DNA from: Oopsacas minuta | Lineage: Eukaryota; Animalia; Porifera | NCBI GenBank assembly: GCA_024704765.1 | Contig: JAKMXF010000296.1 | Location: forward strand, 1 to 64,000 | Direction: 5' to 3' | Length of the DNA stretch: 64,000 bases | Part shown: positions 4,064-12,205 of the stretch, in pieces | How the letters are laid out: each line of letters begins with the position of its first letter | How positions within the stretch are numbered: position 1 is the stretch's first letter | Translations under genes and position numbers: made by a program | Notes under the pieces: model-generated | The model's database searches: none | What the model was told of the DNA's origin: nothing | What the model saw: only the letters and a program-made list of their open reading frames with translations

Positions 4064-4354
4064 GCTTAATTATCCTAGCGAGCGGGATGTATCCTCCTAT
4101 CCTCTGGATCCGCCACTGCATTAGCTTAGGTCACGCAAATATAGAATCTATGATTCGTGTTCTTGTCTCTTTGATAGTTTCTACCAACACAAATTTATAC
4201 GTCTACAAGAGGAGAGACCCTGTTTGACGAAAAGTAAAAATACTGAACACATTCTTCGTACAGTTAGGTGATCTCTAGCAGGTCACATGGGTAGGGATGG
4301 CGGAAATGCTGTTAATAGCTACAATTCTCCAAACAATTAATTGTTTAGACTATA

Positions 4355-5662
4355 CAGGGTGGCTCCAAAGTTCTGATACAAGATCACGATTAATATACAA
4401 CCATTATCAGGAATTATTCTCAATGGTTTGCTCTTCCATAACATACCTTATACGCTTCCTAACAAATATTATTTCAATTTGGCGTATTCTATTTCGAAAA
4501 AAAATTGTGATTGACCATGGAATCTGAGAGGTCAGCAATTTTTGAGTTGCATGTAGCGGGGAAAAGTCCATCAGAAATTTTGAAACTGCTGAATATTGCA
4601 AAATGACGTAGGGCATTTATCTACAGGACGATAAATCGATATAAGGAAACTAGGGACACTGTAGACAAGCAGAGATCTTGTTGTCCATGATCTGTAACGA
4701 CCCAGGTCTCAAGAAAGGGGTGCGAGAACGTTTTCGGCGGAACCCACACCGTCCGATGATGAAAATGGCCTTGGGAGCTCAATATATCTCGCCGAGCAAT
4801 ACAAAAGGTTGTCAAAAGGGACCTAGGAATGCGCTCTTTTAAACGCAAAAAGGTACAATTCCTATCTGGGTCGGTGAAAGAAAAGAGAGTGTCCCGGAGC
4901 AAGAGCCTACTTGCTCAACACGCTATTGGGATTCTCGAAAATATTCTTTTCTCAGATGAGAAAATTTTCACCATAGAAGAGGCTACAAATTGCCAAAACG
5001 ACAGAGTCATCTCGACCTCAGTTTCAGCGATCCCTGATAAGTTCGGATATATCAGTCGGATGAAGTAACCACTGTCGGTTATGGTTTGGGCTGGGGTCTC
5101 TGCTGTTGGCCGGACACCACTGATTTTCATTACCCAGAAGTGAAAATCAATGCCAAAACATACTGAGAGCTTGTATTAGAGCCTGTGGTAAAAGGTCTGA
5201 GCCAGACCATGTTTTCTGGACAGCTATTTGTCTTCCAACAAGATGGTGCTCCCGCCCATACGGCCAATACGACCCAAGATTGGCTGAAGCACAATACTCC
5301 CAATTTTATACACAAAGATGAATGGCCACCATACAGTCCCGATTTAAATCCTATGGACTATTCTGTATGGTCTATCTTGGAAAATAAGGCTTGTTCTGTG
5401 TCACACAACACAGTTAGCTCTCTAAATATTTCCTTGTGTCGAGAATGGGAGAAGATACCCCAAGAAACTCTGCATGCCGCAGTAGAAGGGTTCCCGAACA
5501 GACTCAGGGCTGTCATTTCCATAAAGGGTGGTTATATTGAAATGACTAGGCAATATCTTCCTAATAGCATGTATTAATTTTATATAGAAAATCAATAATG
5601 TAGGTCATGCTGAAAAATATTATAGACAAAATGGTTTGTATCAGAACTTTGGAGCCACCCTG
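4355..5662 (+). mobile_element. Tc1/mariner element, DD37D (maT-like), transposase disrupted
   Basis: TIR CAGGGTGGCTCCAAAGTTCTGATACAA at both ends with TA TSD. Fragments LFSDEKIF and QQDGAPAH...WPPYSPDLNPMD, with 37 residues counted between the last two Asp. Confidence 0.95.
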
Positions 5663-6174
5663 TATATGAATTTGTTTGGATTCAACAAATAATAACATAC
5701 TGTACGCAAATGTGCAGCTCCCCATGGGTCCGAATCCTTAATTTGACTAATTTTTGTCCTTCAGAATTTTATCAGCTGATGTATTTATCCATGTGAAAAA
5801 TATTTGAACCCGATCTATTTTAGTTCATGAATGCACAATTCGGTGTGAAAAGACAGAAATAATAACACATATTGTAACTATGACAACGATATGCCAAACA
5901 AATTCAGAAAAGTATCAATAGAGCCATTGTTTGCAGACTGTATTATATTTTTCACTACTCACATCAAACCTAACAACTCCATTTTCATATTTTAGCTTAT
6001 TATTTTCATGGCAACACCAATTCTGATATTTCTTTCTCTTCTGATTCTAAAACTACCAATGAGTTATGGGAGCATGGTGACGACAATTCTCAATCTAACA
6101 ACACATCCAGCTCATCCATTGATATTGAAACGTTTAGCTCTCAGTCTTTTAATTCTCCAGGTTCTTCCCAACAA

Positions 6175-8194
6175 TTGACACCAGGCATAGCGTCTCCTAT
6201 GACAGTATTGAACCTCTCTTCCCAGGAATCTGAATTTTTCTTCCCCCCAATGTCGAGCACTCCTATCCCACCGCGAAAACGAGGACGACCTTCGAAAGGC
6301 TCAAAGTTCCGAGGAAATCAATATACAAAATCTATTCACGAAACTGACGAGATTTCCTCACTCGATAACTCAATTCTACCTTCACCTACTAGAACCTCTG
6401 TGAAACGTGAAGACTGTCATTCCTCGCCGTGGCTATACATCACGAATATCCGCTCTTATCTATCAATCGAAACGTGACGTAACTTTCGAATGTAACAACA
6501 CCACAAAACATATAAAAGCTTCTAAACCATCTGGAATGAGGATACTTGATATCGGCATAATTGCAGAAGCCATGACGAAGATAGCATGCAGTCAATGTCA
6601 CACTGGATACTTATTATTATTCGAATCTGATTTTCAACATGGATGGCAAACAGATTTCTACCTAAAATGCTCTCATTGTAACCACCAATTTGCCGATTTC
6701 CCTTCATCTAAACCTATGGACGTTCCATTTTTGAAAGAACAAAATTCGTAAATGTTCCACTTCCAAAACGAGAACAAAACGAAGTAGCAATGAGCTCTAT
6801 CCTAGCTGTACACTGTTCAGGACTTTCATGGAGAGATCTACACAAATTCTCAACCATATTCGATATGGTACGATATCCATAAACCGAATTGTAAGAAAAA
6901 CTATAGCGGATCTAGTCAGTCAATGGAGCCAGCAGCAGCAAAAATGATTTGGAGTCGGTCATCTGAAAAGAGAAAACTATGCTCCATAACTTTTATCGGG
7001 GATGGAGACTCGAAATCATACAGCGAAATCTTGCAACTGAATCCCTATGACTCTATTCCCATCCACAAAGAGGAATGTACCACTCACGTTTCGAAACGAC
7101 TAAAGAAGACTTTGTGTAAGATCAAGAAGAACACTGCCAACAAGTCTTATGTTCAGTGCAAACTTTCTGAACCCAAAGCTGACTATATCTCTTCAACCTA
7201 TTCTGCCGTTATCTTTCAAACAGGGGCAAATCAACTGCTGAGTTGTGTAAAGCTATTTCTATCATTCTGGACCATGTTTGCGGTAATCATTCCAACTGCC
7301 CAGAAGACACATGGTGCCGATGGCGACAATCTTCATCCTCAGCAAAACCACCACCCCCTCCAATACCAACTACACACCTGTTGAACAAGCCAAAATTCGA
7401 GAAGTATTCCAAACATACGCTTCGAAAGAGTTTTGCAGCCACCTAACTCTTGGGCTGACTCAAAATGCCAACGAGTCACTACACAACGTTATCTGGAACT
7501 TTGTCCGAAGGCTAAGTATGTTTCCCCTCAAAGTCTTAGAATCTCAAAAGCCATCGCAGTTTCGATTTTCAATGAGGGCGAACTATGTCTATATGGTTTT
7601 ATGCGTGATCTAAATCTAAAACCTTCTCCTCTCTCCTTTAGATCAGTCTGCCTGCGTGAAGAAGTGAGAAAGAGACACCGAAACTATATCAAGAAAGTGA
7701 ACGTACACTGACGAACACGCAGACAGAAACTAATCAAGCTCCGGCATGAAAGGGATCTTCTCAGACAAGAAGGTGGACGTAGCTACAAGTCCAGTGGCTT
7801 TAGTGCTGAAACCTTCAGCAAGCCATCAAAACCCCTTCAAGTTCGAGGACAAAGAAGACCTAGAAGAAGCACATCTTCCCGAGGGACTACCAGCAGAGGC
7901 AAAGTTGTGAAACGATGTCTCATTCCAACAAGGGACTCTGATGATTCTGAAGACTCAACCACTACTTCCGACAATTCTCTAGCTGATAATGAAGTCGATA
8001 CTATCCCAAAAGAAACCTGCGTTATACGCCAACTCACACACCCTCCATCTCAAAGACAACAAGCCATATCTATTTGGGCTAGGGTGAAATGGCTAAGATG
8101 TACCCGATGCGACCGATCATTCCACCAGCGATGCACAGAACTGGACAGGGGGGCTGAGGATAGTTCTTTCATCTGTTTTAGTTGTTTAACCTGA
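6175..8194 (+). pseudogene. Mutator-like/Kolobok-type DDE transposase with N-terminal AT-hook and C-terminal PHD finger, frameshifted
   Basis: Consecutive fragments give RKRGRP, FRGNQYTK, CSQC...CSHC, FIGDGDS, KEECTTHVSKRL, TQNANESLHNVIW and WLRCTRCDRSFHQRC...FICFSC. The region around the first catalytic Asp appears deleted. Superfamily is assigned from motif recall only. Confidence 0.75.
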
Positions 8195-8399
8195 TATATT
8201 CCCTAAATTATGCACATTGATCGACCAACTAATAGCATTTTTATTTTTTTGGCCGCATGACGGATATTGTCCCGATATAGATTTTTTGAAATCTATTGGT
8301 TGATCACTTGATAATCTCCATGATATACCCCCGTCTTGATTGGAGATTATCACATCTTTTGACTGATTTTTTATTGTTTGTTATCAGTCAAAAGCAAGA

Positions 8400-8456
8400 T
8401 GGTGTCTTAAGACAAGGCGTAGCTTGACTGATGAGTCCTAGCGGGACGAAACACCA
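8400..8456 (+). ncRNA. Type III hammerhead ribozyme
   Basis: UGGUGU-C(8406)-UUAAG-loop-CUUGA-CUGAUGA-GUCC-UAGCG-GGAC-GAA-ACACCA. Stems I, II and III all pair, the core is complete and the cleavage triplet is GUC. Confidence 0.87.
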
Positions 8457-8539
8457 CTATAATATGTATATATTCAAAAAATATATTTTATGAATCTTTA
8501 ACTTCAATTGTCTCAAAACTATGTTTTTCGCCATATGGG

Positions 8540-8805
8540 CCAATTACTTTTGAAAAAGACTGTTTCTTTTGCTCTGAAAATTTAGGGGAAGTATTTATAC
8601 AATGTTATTTGAAATCTGGACCACATTTGGAATGAATGAACGAATAATTCTCATGATATCACACCCTAAGACCGGTTTTTAGCCTATTTTTGCCAGACCC
8701 CACATCAAACGTTAATACCTTCTCTCCAGAAATTAGAACTACATATTGTTAGCATATATAACAATTTATAGGTCTTAGGCAATAGTCTTCTTCAAAAGTA
8801 ATTGG
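8540..8805. repeat. 25-bp inverted repeat pair (MITE or subterminal region) ending near CT-TTAA at 8821-8826
   Basis: CCAATTACTTTTGAAAAAGACTGTT (8540-8564) matches the reverse complement of 8781-8805 at 23/25. Confidence 0.6.
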
Positions 8806-10080
8806 GTAATATGTCCCGAACTTTAATGTTACGTCTACTGGAGGACTTTTGTCCCCCCCCTTTTCATGCCCAATTCGTAATACACACTAGATACATCGGG
8901 GTTTATTATTATTATTATCTCATAGTTTGGCCAATGCAAACGAGCTGGAAAACAATAAACATGTATAATGGCATATACTTTAGAAAATAGCCCATACCGT
9001 AATACAAAGTTCGCGGTGAGTTCATCGAAATTCCTGGAGATTAACCGTAACACTTACGGAGATCTATGATTTTCACGGATCATTTCAAATCTCACCCTGA
9101 GTCTAATCCGGCCCTACGTACAACAGTGGAGAACTTAATAATTAAGATGTCTATGATATGCTTAGATTCTGATTTGTAAAAGGCTGCATATTTTTCCACT
9201 TTTGTTGTTGACTAAAACATGTGTGCAACAATAAGTGTGAGTGCTATAACTAGTGAAAGTTTCATTAACTGAGGTGTAATATGTCTTGAGCTAGTTTATA
9301 CAAATACAAAATGTGTTATATTTTTCAGGCGAATAAATATTCTTATGTTATGAATTGATAGTGTTGGACAGATGCAAGTACATTTTGGACGATGAATCAG
9401 GGCTCCTGATCTAAAACATATTATAACTATCAATTTTCAAGATTTCATTGATATTCAATAAATTAATGTATTCGTACATACAAGTATACAAAGTAGCGTA
9501 TTTCTATTTTCAATTTGAATACTTAAAACTCTTTCTTTTTGTACAATATTGCGTGGCACTTGGTAATCATGCTTCCAAAGTCCGAACACATGCCCAAGCC
9601 ACGCTAGTGGTAGTTAAATTGAATGAAAAAGTATATATTCATAATATTATTTGGTATCTGTTCTTCTCTTTCTGAAATTCTCTCATCAATGGGAAACCTC
9701 ATATTGTTTAAACCTTTATGAGCTCTTCACTCATCCATATTTTACCAAGAAACATATCTTAGATTTCCCTCAATCGTTGAACAATAGGCAAAGTGTAAAT
9801 ATATAAAACGTATATTGTTACTTTAAATAGAGTAATTTATTTGGAAATTTTTGACTTTTTATTGAAATTTGATTCTTCAAGATGGGATGTTGTTTTGGTA
9901 ATCAGAAAAGTGTAAGTAATATTTTAGGTATGACATCTGTCCAATGTAGGATTTTTCAATGTATTTGTGGCCTTAGTGCACTATCCAATTTTCTATTCAA
10001 TTAATGCATTTTGTTTCACATACTATATATTCAAGCAGAAATTAATCTTACGGCGAACGTATTGTTGTTAATTAGATACA

Positions 10081-12205
10081 CAGGGCCGTAGGAAGCTGTT
10101 CAACTGTGGTCAGGCCATAAGGCCTAATCAAGGTTGGGTTTCAGCAGAGCCGGATTAAGCAGTTCCGAGGCCCTGGGCTAAATATTCAATGAGGCCCTCG
10201 AACCCTTTTACCCCTGAAATTTATACAGGAGTAAATTTGTTAAATGTATTTCACTAAAGTTTTGTAGAATTATTTATAGTCTAAAATTGCATGACATCCA
10301 TCAAAAATTAAATTTTCGAGACTTCATTTCAACAAATGTCCTTAGTACATCCTCAAATTCAACTTTTTTGAGTATTTCGCTTTCATGTGACATAAGAGAT
10401 AGGTAATTAAGTCTTTCCTGTTTCATACAAGTTCTCTTTTCATTTAAAATAAGTCTCAGCTTTGAAAATGAGCGTTCTCCTGTTGCATTAGTTATCATCA
10501 GTGACAAATATATACGCATCATAATTTCGACATTCGGAAATGTTGATACTAGTTGATAGTCAAATAGGATGTCATAAATTTGTTGTACTGATACTAGGTC
10601 ACAACTCTTGATTTCAAGATCCACGAAGTGACAAAAGTGCTTGTATTTCTCTGAAAATTCTTTCTCTAAGTCCGATCGGTATTCTTGTTTTAACCGTTCA
10701 TATGCTAGTTCAATATCTTTTTCTGATATATGTCTGAATTCATAGAGAAAGCCAAATAAATTATAGACCTGCTCATATGCTTCGATGCGTGTTTTGAGTG
10801 CTACTGATAAGTTATCTAAAATGAGTAAGAACGAATCTACCCTGAATCAGACTCATATTCTTTCTTGTTAGGATCAATTTTCTGCAAATCTATACCAACT
10901 TCCAGCAATTTATGTTGATTTTCATTCACAGGAAACTAACAATTTGTGATATTTCACTTCTTTCGTTTTTTCCTGAAGCAACATCAACAACGTCTGTAAC
11001 TGTAATTTCTCTAGGCATACGTGAAAACCCAAGATCCTATATCTTTGGTGTTTGGCGAATAATTAATTCGTTTTCCTTTCTTTTCTCTTCCTGTTTCTTG
11101 TGCTTGGCTGCACCACTTTCATGACGCTTTTCACGCTCTCAGCCATAAGTTAAATAATAACTAAAATTCAGAAATCTTACTAATAAATAACAGAATAAAA
11201 GTTGCAATTATGTACAAGAATACCATCTTCTCCCCTAGGTCGAAACCGCAGGTAAGAAACAGGAATGATTTTTCAACAACTCAAGTACTGATGAACAATG
11301 ACCGTTGATTTTACACACAGTACTGAAATGGTTTCTTAGCTTGAAGGTGGCAACCACTGTTATCGAATACCCAGGGCTCGATTAAGCTAGATGGGGTCTG
11401 AGACACAGCTGAATTTGGGGCCAGGAGGCCTGTGCCTCATGGTTATTCGGGCACTGCGAATACCTTAAGCTGGAATTCAGAGACCCCCTTTTGTCTCGAG
11501 GCCCTGGGCTGCAGCCCAGTTAGCCCATTGGATAATCTGGCTCTGGGTTTCAGAGAACCTTACCGGGGAAGTTTTGAAACAAAATGCCTTGAAATAGCTC
11601 ATTGACTACCTGGTATAATACATTTCCACATTATTTCAGATTAAACAAATCATTTTGATTTTCAGACATACTGACAAATAATAAAGTATCATGGAAATAA
11701 TGATTGTAACTATAAAATACATTACAATTAAATGATTATTGTAGCATCATTCCTTTTTCAATCAGAAGATACTAAGATATGTATAAAATAGGCAAGCATT
11801 TGGAGGTAAATGGATGAGGCAATCCTTCTCTTATGCTATATACAATTTTTGGTGAGTGAGGGTGAAGATAATTCTCTCAAATTATAGAAATTTTATGTTA
11901 ACTTATCTTACATTATTATTTGCTAGAGGCCAGACCAAAGTTTATCCGGTGTCCAATCGAATAGCAAATAGTAGAAGCACACCCGGCGAATATCCAACAC
12001 ATTTATTTAATCATTCAAAACTATGGTTCTTGTAAGTCAAGGCTGTGGAGGTGGTACAGAGAAAAAGTATAAAATATTAATATATGCAGTGATTTTAATA
12101 CTGGCCAATTTGCATAGTAAAAATCCATCAGTTTGGAGCGAATTGGTAGGGTGTTACTTTTCTGAAAGTGGTCAGGCCATGGCCTGACCACTTCCTACAA
12201 CCATG
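10081..12205. mobile_element. Possible older hAT-like shell enclosing the 10145-11545 element
   Basis: CAGGGCCGTAGGAAG at the left and CTTCCTACAACCATG at the right are imperfect inverted ends. Both ends carry GTGGTCAGGCC motifs. No TSD found. Confidence 0.45.
10145..11545 (-). mobile_element. Internally deleted hAT element
   Basis: TIRs CAGAGCCGGATTA / ATAATCTGGCTCTG with an 8-bp TSD GGTTTCAG. The C-terminal fragment TNATGERSFSKLRLI...QERLNYLSLMSHE is at 10301-10624. Confidence 0.9.

What the first reader, a model, noticed from the sequence alone, without database searches (positions are those of the whole stretch)
8400..8456. Complete type III hammerhead ribozyme in an animal genome
Seen: stem III UGGUGU/ACACCA (6 bp), GUC triplet with C17 at 8406, stem I UUAAG/CUUGA with an 11-nt loop, CUGAUGA at 8428-8434, stem II GUCC/GGAC with loop UAGCG, then GAAA at 8448-8451. 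Every core nucleotide is canonical. Established: animal genomic hammerheads are mostly type I, whereas type III is typical of plant retrozymes and viroid-like RNAs. It is the only such motif I found on either strand.
Basis: partly seen in the sequence, partly recalled or inferred. Interest (0 to 1): 0.9.

Follow-up and report, generated by a model that had tools for sequence, protein, structure and literature searches.

The report
Hammerhead ribozyme inside sponge DNA transposon
A complete self-cleaving "hammerhead" RNA motif in a glass-sponge genome is a conserved built-in part of a family of cut-and-paste (Mutator-like) transposons, lying just after the transposase gene, a pairing I could not find described for eukaryotic DNA transposons.

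Summary
In detail: window 8400-8456 (+) is a complete, canonical type III hammerhead (Rfam Hammerhead_3 end to end at 36.9 bits, below the 48.5 gathering score). It is the only one in the window and far better than chance allows. The window is Oopsacas minuta (glass sponge, about 61 Mb genome). The motif lies 205 nt after the stop codon of a decayed Mutator-like (MULE) transposase with a C-terminal PHD finger. Homologous MULE copies in other assemblies carry the same motif at the same place and on the same strand. One has an intact 848-aa transposase and a fully canonical hammerhead (45.5 bits). The hammerhead and two upstream hairpins (one with clear covariation) form a roughly 155-nt block that is the most conserved part of the element's 3' end. 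In the sponge's own runs this block has about 10-15 times the depth of the transposase body. My best reading is a ribozyme module that cuts the transposon's transcript after C8406 and so defines or regulates the transposase RNA's 3' end. Cleavage is untested because no RNA runs were available. The link to a DNA transposon was absent from the literature I could search. Earlier unchecked notes of this scan report similar hammerheads elsewhere in this genome.

The parts
5894..9002 (+). Decayed Mutator-like (MULE) DNA transposon copy; this is the minimum extent given by homology to the intact element in L016
   Evidence: blastn against L016 9904-13375: 70% over 5960-6867, 78% over 6866-8661, and patches to 9002. 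About 330 nt of L016 (10870-11204) are absent from the window. True ends and TIRs were not resolved.
5992..8194 (+). Transposase pseudogene: a PF20700 Mutator-like domain and a C-terminal PHD finger, broken by several frameshifts, an in-frame stop and an internal deletion
   Evidence: Frame map. Pfam Mutator 2e-14 and PHD 3.2e-5. The piece 6806-7381 is 78% identical at protein level to the intact 848-aa P0163.
8305..8460 (+). Conserved non-coding 3' module (hairpin 1, hairpin 2, hammerhead)
   Evidence: Pairwise identity is 0.73-0.82 here against 0.06-0.31 just upstream and 0.26-0.49 downstream. It folds as three separate domains in the window and in L016, z -2.2 and -2.4. Depth rises 10-15 fold here in the sponge's own runs.
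8309..8352 (+). Hairpin 1 (12-bp stem, 8309-8320 with 8341-8352)
   Evidence: MFE fold. RNAalifold recovers the outer 9 pairs in 7 copies, with U-A/G-U alternation at one pair.
8356..8394 (+). Hairpin 2 (12-bp stem, 8356-8367 with 8383-8394)
   Evidence: MFE fold. In the RNAalifold consensus one pair appears as U-A, A-U, C-G and G-C, and the next as U-A, A-U and G-U.
8400..8456 (+). Type III hammerhead ribozyme motif. Stem III 8400-8405/8451-8456; C17 8406; stem I 8407-8411/8423-8427; loop 1 8412-8422; core CUGAUGA 8428-8434; stem II 8435-8438/8444-8447; loop 2 8439-8443; GAAA 8448-8451
   Evidence: It is homologous to the motifs in L016, L001, L004, L006 and L013.
8406..8407 (+). Predicted self-cleavage site (3' of C17)
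   Evidence: Inferred from the hammerhead consensus; not tested because no RNA runs were available.

Best explanation
Window 8400-8456 is a genuine type III hammerhead ribozyme. It is a built-in, selected component of a family of Mutator-like (MULE) cut-and-paste transposons of glass sponges. It sits in the sense strand, 130-210 nt after the transposase stop codon and several hundred nt inside the element's 3' end, directly after two conserved hairpins. Shown: the motif, its position, its homologues, its higher conservation than its surroundings, and its multi-copy status. Inferred: when the element is transcribed, the RNA cuts itself after C8406. This would separate the transposase message from the downstream terminal sequence and from any read-through into host DNA. 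It would leave a 3' end (2',3'-cyclic phosphate) immediately behind the two hairpins, which may protect that end. The likely effect is a polyadenylation-independent or self-limiting way of setting the level and 3' end of transposase RNA. The copy in this window is a dead element (broken transposase) whose ribozyme is still canonical.
For: The motif is canonical and matches Rfam Hammerhead_3 end to end. Chance expectation is negligible. The transposase is a PF20700 Mutator-like protein with a PHD finger. DNA homologous to 8297-8460 follows the homologous transposase genes in L001, L004, L005/L006 (two copies), L013 and L016, always on the transposase strand. L016 pairs an intact 848-aa transposase with a fully canonical hammerhead: GUC, CUGAUGA, G10.1-C11.1, 7-bp stem III, Rfam 45.5 bits. 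GAAA is invariant in the six complete copies aligned in A4, and the L016 copy added later keeps CUGAUGA and GAAA intact. The hammerhead block has 0.79 pairwise identity against 0.46 upstream and 0.38 downstream, higher than the PHD coding part. RNAalifold independently recovers the three-way junction and two upstream hairpins with compensatory changes. In O. minuta runs the module's word depth is 10-15 times that of the transposase body. Of the three majority variants across 9-12 contigs, 8399 A>G and 8426 G>A strengthen helices and 8419 G>A lies in loop 1. The U10.1.U11.1 seen in the second version is a documented natural, active variation, and stems I and II differing by 2 bp goes with a loop-loop pseudoknot in type III hammerheads (PMC3088659). 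Such complementarity exists in 5 of 6 copies.
Against: No cleavage data exist: no RNA run was available and contigs show no read ends. Rfam scores are below the gathering threshold. Covariation within the hammerhead stems is not above the shuffle controls with 6 sequences. Loop-loop pairing is only modestly better than shuffled loops. Several copies carry core or junction defects: L001 has C3>U, L004 has C at 16.1, L015 is truncated inside the motif. More distant MULE relatives (L002, L007-L012) lack the module, so it is not essential to MULEs in general. The biological role (3'-end formation or regulation) is inference only.
Confidence: 0.6

Rival explanations
1. Passenger relic: an ancestor of this MULE lineage captured a hammerhead-bearing fragment (from a retrozyme-like, viroid-like or phage/bacterial source). 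The fragment is simply inherited with the element and plays no role for it.
For: MULEs are known to capture foreign DNA (my own knowledge; an unchecked scan note reports a Pack-MULE-like element in this genome). More distant relatives lack the module. A phage-like metagenome contig carries a hammerhead with the same stem I 3' strand, core and stem II letters. Several copies are mutated.
Against: The module is the most conserved part of the 3' region across copies that are only 65-78% identical overall, more so than the coding PHD part. Orientation and distance to the stop codon are fixed. The adjacent hairpins covary. The copy with an intact transposase has the best ribozyme.
Confidence: 0.17
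2. A conserved structured element that is not catalytic: the roughly 155-nt block acts as an RNA or DNA structure (protein-binding site, stability or localisation element). The hammerhead-like fold in it, at least in the version with GUA and U.U, does not cleave.
For: Hairpins 1 and 2 are as conserved as the hammerhead. Most copies of the second version have a U.U at 10.1/11.1, and Rfam does not report them at E<=1. Rfam scores are sub-threshold.
Against: Conserving exactly the 13 core nucleotides that catalysis needs, in two versions whose loops differ, is hard to explain without catalysis. U10.1.U11.1 is known to be compatible with cleavage (PMC3088659).
Confidence: 0.12
3. Retrozyme-like circular RNA: the hammerhead excises a small RNA that is circularised and spreads by reverse transcription, as in plant (type III) and animal (type I) retrozymes.
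For: Type III hammerheads are the hallmark of plant retrozymes. The module is more abundant than the transposase body in the sponge.
Against: There is only one hammerhead per element and no flanking direct repeats or tandem copies. It is collinear with a DNA-transposase gene in every copy found. The extra depth covers the whole 3' part of the element, as expected for deletion derivatives of a DNA transposon.
Confidence: 0.06
4. Chance occurrence of the hammerhead consensus in AT-rich DNA.
For: The loose core pattern CUGAUGA...GAAA occurs at the chance rate in the window. The fold energy of the 57-mer is ordinary.
Against: No simulated motif with stems of 4/3/4 bp or more in 40 Mb. Local Rfam E 1.1e-6. 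Homologous motifs occur in six other loci and in many contigs of the same genome.
Confidence: 0.01

Closest known systems
Type III hammerhead ribozymes of plant LTR retrozymes and viroid-like or satellite circular RNAs (Rfam RF00008)
   Same: Same ribozyme class and topology: stem III open, loops on stems I and II, canonical core, and compact size of about 57 nt. Carried by a mobile element.
   Different: Those sit in LTR direct repeats or in both polarities of small non-coding circular RNAs and act in pairs to release a circle. This is a single copy per element, in an animal, downstream of a DNA-transposase gene. Rfam score is below gathering (36.9 and 45.5 against 48.5).
Hammerheads of Penelope-like elements/Terminons and metazoan non-LTR retrozymes
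   Same: Hammerheads embedded in animal transposable elements and multiplied with them.
   Different: Those are type I, often minimal or dimeric, lie in terminal or tandem repeats, and belong to retroelements. This one is type III, monomeric in design, and in a cut-and-paste MULE.
Discontinuous hammerhead in the 3' UTR of mammalian Clec2 genes
   Same: A type III hammerhead in the 3' untranslated region of a protein-coding transcript, proposed to affect 3'-end choice and expression.
   Different: Clec2's stem I is interrupted by 150-1500 nt and it is a host gene. Here the ribozyme is compact, multi-copy and part of a transposon.
HDV-like ribozymes of non-LTR retrotransposons (R2, L1Tc, RTE)
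   Different: A different ribozyme class, placed at the 5' end of retroelement RNA to release it from a co-transcript. This one is a hammerhead at the 3' side of a DNA transposon's gene.
Prokaryotic and phage type III hammerheads with a loop-loop pseudoknot (Perreault et al. 2011)
   Same: Compact type III design, stem I two pairs longer than stem II, possible loop 1-loop 2 pairing, a tolerated U10.1.U11.1 variant, and an intergenic position after an ORF.
   Different: Those are in phage or bacterial DNA, often as pairs. This one is in an animal's DNA transposon with conserved upstream hairpins.

Membership tests
Hammerhead ribozyme, type III (Rfam RF00008) | Conserved core C3 U4 G5 A6 N7 G8 A9, G12 A13 A14, A15.1-U16.1, H17 | tested here: met
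   All positions are canonical at 8405-8406, 8428-8434 and 8448-8451. The same holds in L016.
Hammerhead ribozyme, type III (Rfam RF00008) | Three helices around the core, stem III open-ended, stems I and II closed by loops | tested here: met
   Rfam alignment over model 1-54; MFE in context; RNAalifold on 7 copies.
Hammerhead ribozyme, type III (Rfam RF00008) | Base pair 10.1-11.1 (normally G-C) opening stem II | tested here: met
   G8435-C8447 in the window and G-C in L016. The second version has U.U, A-U or C.A. U.U is a documented active variant.
Hammerhead ribozyme, type III (Rfam RF00008) | Score at or above the curated Rfam gathering threshold (48.5 bits) | tested here: not met
   36.9 bits for the window and 45.5 bits for L016. 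The long loop 1 and short loop 2 cost score; no core mismatch.
Hammerhead ribozyme, type III (Rfam RF00008) | Tertiary contact between loops 1 and 2, needed for fast cleavage at cellular Mg2+ | tested here: inconclusive
   4-6 bp loop-loop complementarity in 5 of 6 copies, but 4-30% of shuffled loops do as well.
Hammerhead ribozyme, type III (Rfam RF00008) | Site-specific self-cleavage 3' of H17 | not testable with these tools
   No RNA runs hold the locus, and contigs give no read ends.
Retrozyme (plant LTR type or metazoan non-LTR type) | Two or more hammerheads in direct or tandem repeats bracketing a short non-coding unit | tested here: not met
   One motif in 64 kb; no direct repeat around it; one per element in the related loci.
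Retrozyme (plant LTR type or metazoan non-LTR type) | Non-autonomous and non-coding, mobilised by a retrotransposon | tested here: not met
   The motif is collinear with a Mutator-like DNA-transposase gene, intact in L016 and L006.
Penelope-like element hammerhead | Type I (often minimal) hammerhead in the terminal repeats of an RT/GIY-YIG retroelement | tested here: not met
   Type III topology. The neighbouring gene is PF20700 Mutator-like, not a reverse transcriptase.
Mutator-like (MULE) DNA transposon (host element) | Mutator-like DDE transposase domain | tested here: met
   PF20700 at 2e-14 in the window, 3e-41 in L006 and 5e-59 in P0008.
Mutator-like (MULE) DNA transposon (host element) | Terminal inverted repeats and target-site duplications | tested here: inconclusive
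   L006 has nested inverted repeats 9245-9311/13089-13160 (25 nt at 96%, 72 nt at 68%). None is convincing in the window or L016.
Mutator-like (MULE) DNA transposon (host element) | Multi-copy, with intact and decayed members | tested here: met
   68 close transposase clusters, many 800+ aa with up to 44 members. Depth and contig counts in the sponge's runs. A second sponge copy, L015.

The most novel reading that the evidence does not exclude
Autonomous Mutator-like DNA transposons of glass sponges end their transposase messenger with a self-cleaving type III hammerhead preceded by two protective hairpins. This would be a ribozyme-made, poly(A)-independent 3' end that also cuts the message free of the element's 3' terminal repeat, so no terminal-repeat double-stranded RNA forms to trigger silencing. 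It would be the first ribozyme-based gene-expression device of a eukaryotic cut-and-paste transposon and the first abundant type III hammerhead family in an animal genome.
Probability: 0.3. Interest if true: 0.85.

Novelty: new variant of a known kind. Interest (0 to 1): 0.7.

Why it matters
Hammerheads are known in viroid-like RNAs, retrozymes, Penelope-like retroelements, satellites, a few host introns and UTRs, and phages. In animals they are almost all type I and tied to retroelements. A type III hammerhead kept under selection inside a DNA transposon, next to an intact transposase gene, would add a new class of ribozyme-bearing mobile element. It would suggest a new way for a transposon to shape its own messenger RNA, and it would place type III hammerheads in one of the earliest-branching animal lineages. 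It also gives a compact natural module (two hairpins plus a ribozyme) that can be tested as an mRNA 3'-end device. The claim is directly testable with one in vitro transcription and with existing sponge RNA-seq data.

Tried and rejected
1. The default Rfam scan of the window was blank; the match appears only in E-value mode.
2. Both searches for RNA runs returned only the assembly's own sample as contigs, so the read-end test at 8406/8407 could not be done.
3. Pattern scans of JGI metagenomes and IMG/VR gave one unrelated phage-like hammerhead contig (L014) and nothing viral.
4. The element is a MULE, the TTAA is the conserved 5' strand of stem I, and homology continues 200+ nt past it.
5. I first read 8520-8811 as a MITE insertion marking the element's end. 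That is unresolved: homology to L016 runs through to 8661, although one contig lacks that stretch.
6. The TIR search in the window and L016 was inconclusive.
7. Covariation within the hammerhead helices was not above the shuffle controls with 6 sequences.
8. The loop-loop pseudoknot was only weakly supported.
9. Searching with the C-terminal transposase piece gave a single sponge protein, whose locus holds a copy truncated inside the ribozyme.
10. The relatives without the module showed no other Rfam ribozyme.
11. Look-up of the scan's notes by sequence was blank.

Full report
**Observation.**
- Stem III has 6 bp (8400-8405 with 8451-8456).
- The cleavage triplet is GUC, with C17 at 8406.
- Stem I has 5 bp (one U.G) and is closed by an 11-nt loop.
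- CUGAUGA is at 8428-8434.
- Stem II has 4 bp (GUCC/GGAC) with loop UAGCG.
- GAAA is at 8448-8451, and its last A opens stem III.

A descriptor I wrote for type III hammerheads finds this motif and no other on either strand. Rfam's default scan is blank. In E-value mode, Hammerhead_3 aligns over its full length at 36.9 bits with local E 1.1e-6, below the curated 48.5 bits.

In 40 Mb of Markov-chain sequence with the window's dinucleotide make-up, nothing reached stems of 4/3/4 bp or more. A motif with 5/4/6 bp is therefore not expected by chance in a 61-Mb genome. The fold energy of the isolated 57-mer is ordinary.

**Organism and surroundings.**
The window is the first 64 kb of contig JAKMXF010000296.1 of assembly GCA_024704765.1, the glass sponge Oopsacas minuta. 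The genome is about 61 Mb and 36% G+C.

Upstream of the motif, at 5992-8194 on the same strand, lies a broken gene for a Mutator-like transposase (Pfam PF20700) with a C-terminal PHD finger. It has several frameshifts, an in-frame stop, and about 330 nt missing relative to an intact relative. Its stop codon is 205 nt before the hammerhead. A young mariner with perfect 31-nt inverted repeats lies just upstream at 4351-5666.

**Relatives.**
An exhaustive protein search with the best transposase piece found hundreds of relatives. I fetched DNA around twelve of them.
- In L001, L004, L005/L006 (two copies), L013 and L016, DNA homologous to window 8297-8460 follows the transposase gene on the same strand.
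- L016 is the key case. It has an intact 848-aa transposase, 78% identical in protein to the window's piece and 78% in DNA over 6866-8661. This is followed by a fully canonical hammerhead (GUC, CUGAUGA, G10.1-C11.1, GAAA, 7-bp stem III) that scores 45.5 bits with Rfam.
- A second version, in L001, L004, L006 and L013, has GUA and mostly U.U at 10.1/11.1. Perreault et al. (PMC3088659) report this mismatch in natural hammerheads and say it supports more cleavage than any other mispair.
- Individual copies have decayed: L001 has C3>U, L004 has C at 16.1, and the second sponge copy L015 is truncated between stem I and the core.
- More distant MULE relatives (L002, L007-L012) lack the module and have no other Rfam ribozyme.

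**Conservation and structure.**
Along the aligned 3' regions of six copies, pairwise identity is 0.79 in the hammerhead, 0.46 upstream and 0.38 downstream. Two further peaks of about 0.8 sit at 8305-8324 and 8345-8364. The PHD coding part scores only 0.4-0.6, and conservation collapses right after stem III.

RNAalifold, given no hint, returns the hammerhead three-way junction and two upstream hairpins. In hairpin 2 one pair occurs as U-A, A-U, C-G and G-C, and the next as U-A, A-U and G-U. In context, the window and L016 modules both fold as three separate domains, with z -2.2 and -2.4.

Within the hammerhead helices, 90% of cells pair. With six similar sequences there is only one compensatory change (G-C to A-U at 10.1/11.1), which does not exceed the shuffles. 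Loops 1 and 2 can form 4-6 bp in five of six copies, and stem I exceeds stem II by two pairs in the second version, the pattern linked to pseudoknots in type III hammerheads. Shuffled loops do as well 4-30% of the time.

**Copy number in the sponge.**
I laid contigs of the sponge's own runs on 7600-9000 at 80% likeness or better. Word depth is about 90-190 over the transposase end, then 1150-1630 over 8305-8539. At the listed variant sites, 9-12 different contigs carry the alternative base. The majority changes are these:
- 8399 A>G adds a seventh stem III pair with C8457.
- 8426 G>A turns U.G into U-A in stem I.
- 8419 G>A lies in loop 1.

No listed majority change hits the core, though most variant rows were not shown. 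A run from a second, coded organism holds 8368-8522 at about 95% identity. The 3' part of the element, ribozyme included, is thus far more abundant than this transposase body, as expected if deletion derivatives keep the ends. Unchecked notes of this scan list about 21 findings of type III hammerheads, most of those shown lying 3' of DNA-transposon genes in other pieces of this genome. I used them only as a lead.

**Position in the element.**
Homology between the window and L016 continues 200 nt past the hammerhead, with patches to about 9000. In L006 the motif lies about 580 nt inside a nested inverted repeat that may be the 3' terminal repeat. The ribozyme is therefore internal, between the stop codon and the 3' end, not at a terminus. 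The TTAA after the cleavage site is simply the conserved 5' strand of stem I.

**Mechanism.**
- *Shown:* a canonical type III hammerhead, fixed in place and strand relative to a MULE transposase gene, more conserved than its surroundings, multi-copy, and best preserved next to an intact gene.
- *Inferred:* transcripts of the element cut themselves after C17. This releases the coding part, ending just behind two stable hairpins, from the downstream terminal sequence and any read-through. It could set the RNA's 3' end without polyadenylation, limit transposase expression, or prevent pairing of the two terminal repeats within one RNA.
- *Confidence:* about 0.85 that this is a real, element-borne hammerhead family; about 0.4-0.5 for the specific role; 0.6 for the combined statement.
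- *Rivals:* a hitch-hiking captured fragment (0.17), a conserved but non-catalytic structure (0.12), a retrozyme-like circle (0.06), and chance (0.01).

**Comparison and novelty.**
By core and topology it is a type III hammerhead, though below Rfam's threshold. It fails the defining features of retrozymes (paired ribozymes in repeats, non-coding) and of Penelope-like element hammerheads (type I, retroelement).

It works most like a 3'-UTR ribozyme such as the Clec2 hammerhead, or like the HDV-like ribozymes that process retrotransposon RNAs. The host element, however, is a cut-and-paste DNA transposon. Full-text searches for hammerheads together with DNA transposons, Mutator-like elements, cut-and-paste elements or sponges found no such report. 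The reviews assign type I to metazoans and type III to plants and infectious circular RNAs. I rate it a new variant of a known kind.

**Limits.**
- There is no experimental or RNA evidence for cleavage.
- Only seven complete copies were in hand.
- The organisms behind the ENA assemblies are unknown.
- Element ends are unresolved.
- The literature search covers open-access papers and preprints only.

Noticed in passing
window 4351-5666: Young mariner/Tc1 element with perfect 31-nt terminal inverted repeats and a DDE_3 ORF (5185-5577), about 230 nt upstream of the MULE's 5' homology limit.
   Followed up: partly
window 10301-10624 (-): ORF with a hAT-family C-terminal dimerisation domain (Pfam 6.4e-10), a fragment of another DNA transposon.
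   Followed up: no
window 8519-8812: Contigs of the sponge's own runs include a form that skips 292 nt (TA..TA ends), bounded by 51-nt inverted repeat arms at 8532-8582 and 8763-8813. Whether this is an insertion here or a deletion elsewhere is unresolved, because L016 homology runs through to 8661.
   Followed up: partly
L016 19674-19735 (+): A second, weaker hammerhead-like motif (CUGAUGA, GUCCC/GGGAC, GAAA intact; poor stem III; 16.4 bits with model R1) with no transposase ORF upstream. It may be a relic of another ribozyme-bearing element.
   Followed up: partly
L014 1812-1864 and 2279-2337 (JGI contig CERP01026441.1): A phage-like metagenome contig with two type III hammerheads between ORFs. 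One shares the stem I 3' strand, core and stem II letters with the sponge ribozyme.
   Followed up: partly
L006 14082-14445: Tandem array of about 42-nt units, each an imperfect palindrome (GAAGTGGGGTC...GACCCCATTTC), about 900 nt beyond the MULE copy.
   Followed up: no
L015 8122-8956 (O. minuta contig JAKMXF010000105.1): Second sponge copy of the same MULE 3' region, 89% identical to window 7583-8425. Its homology stops exactly between stem I and the CUGAUGA box.
   Followed up: yes
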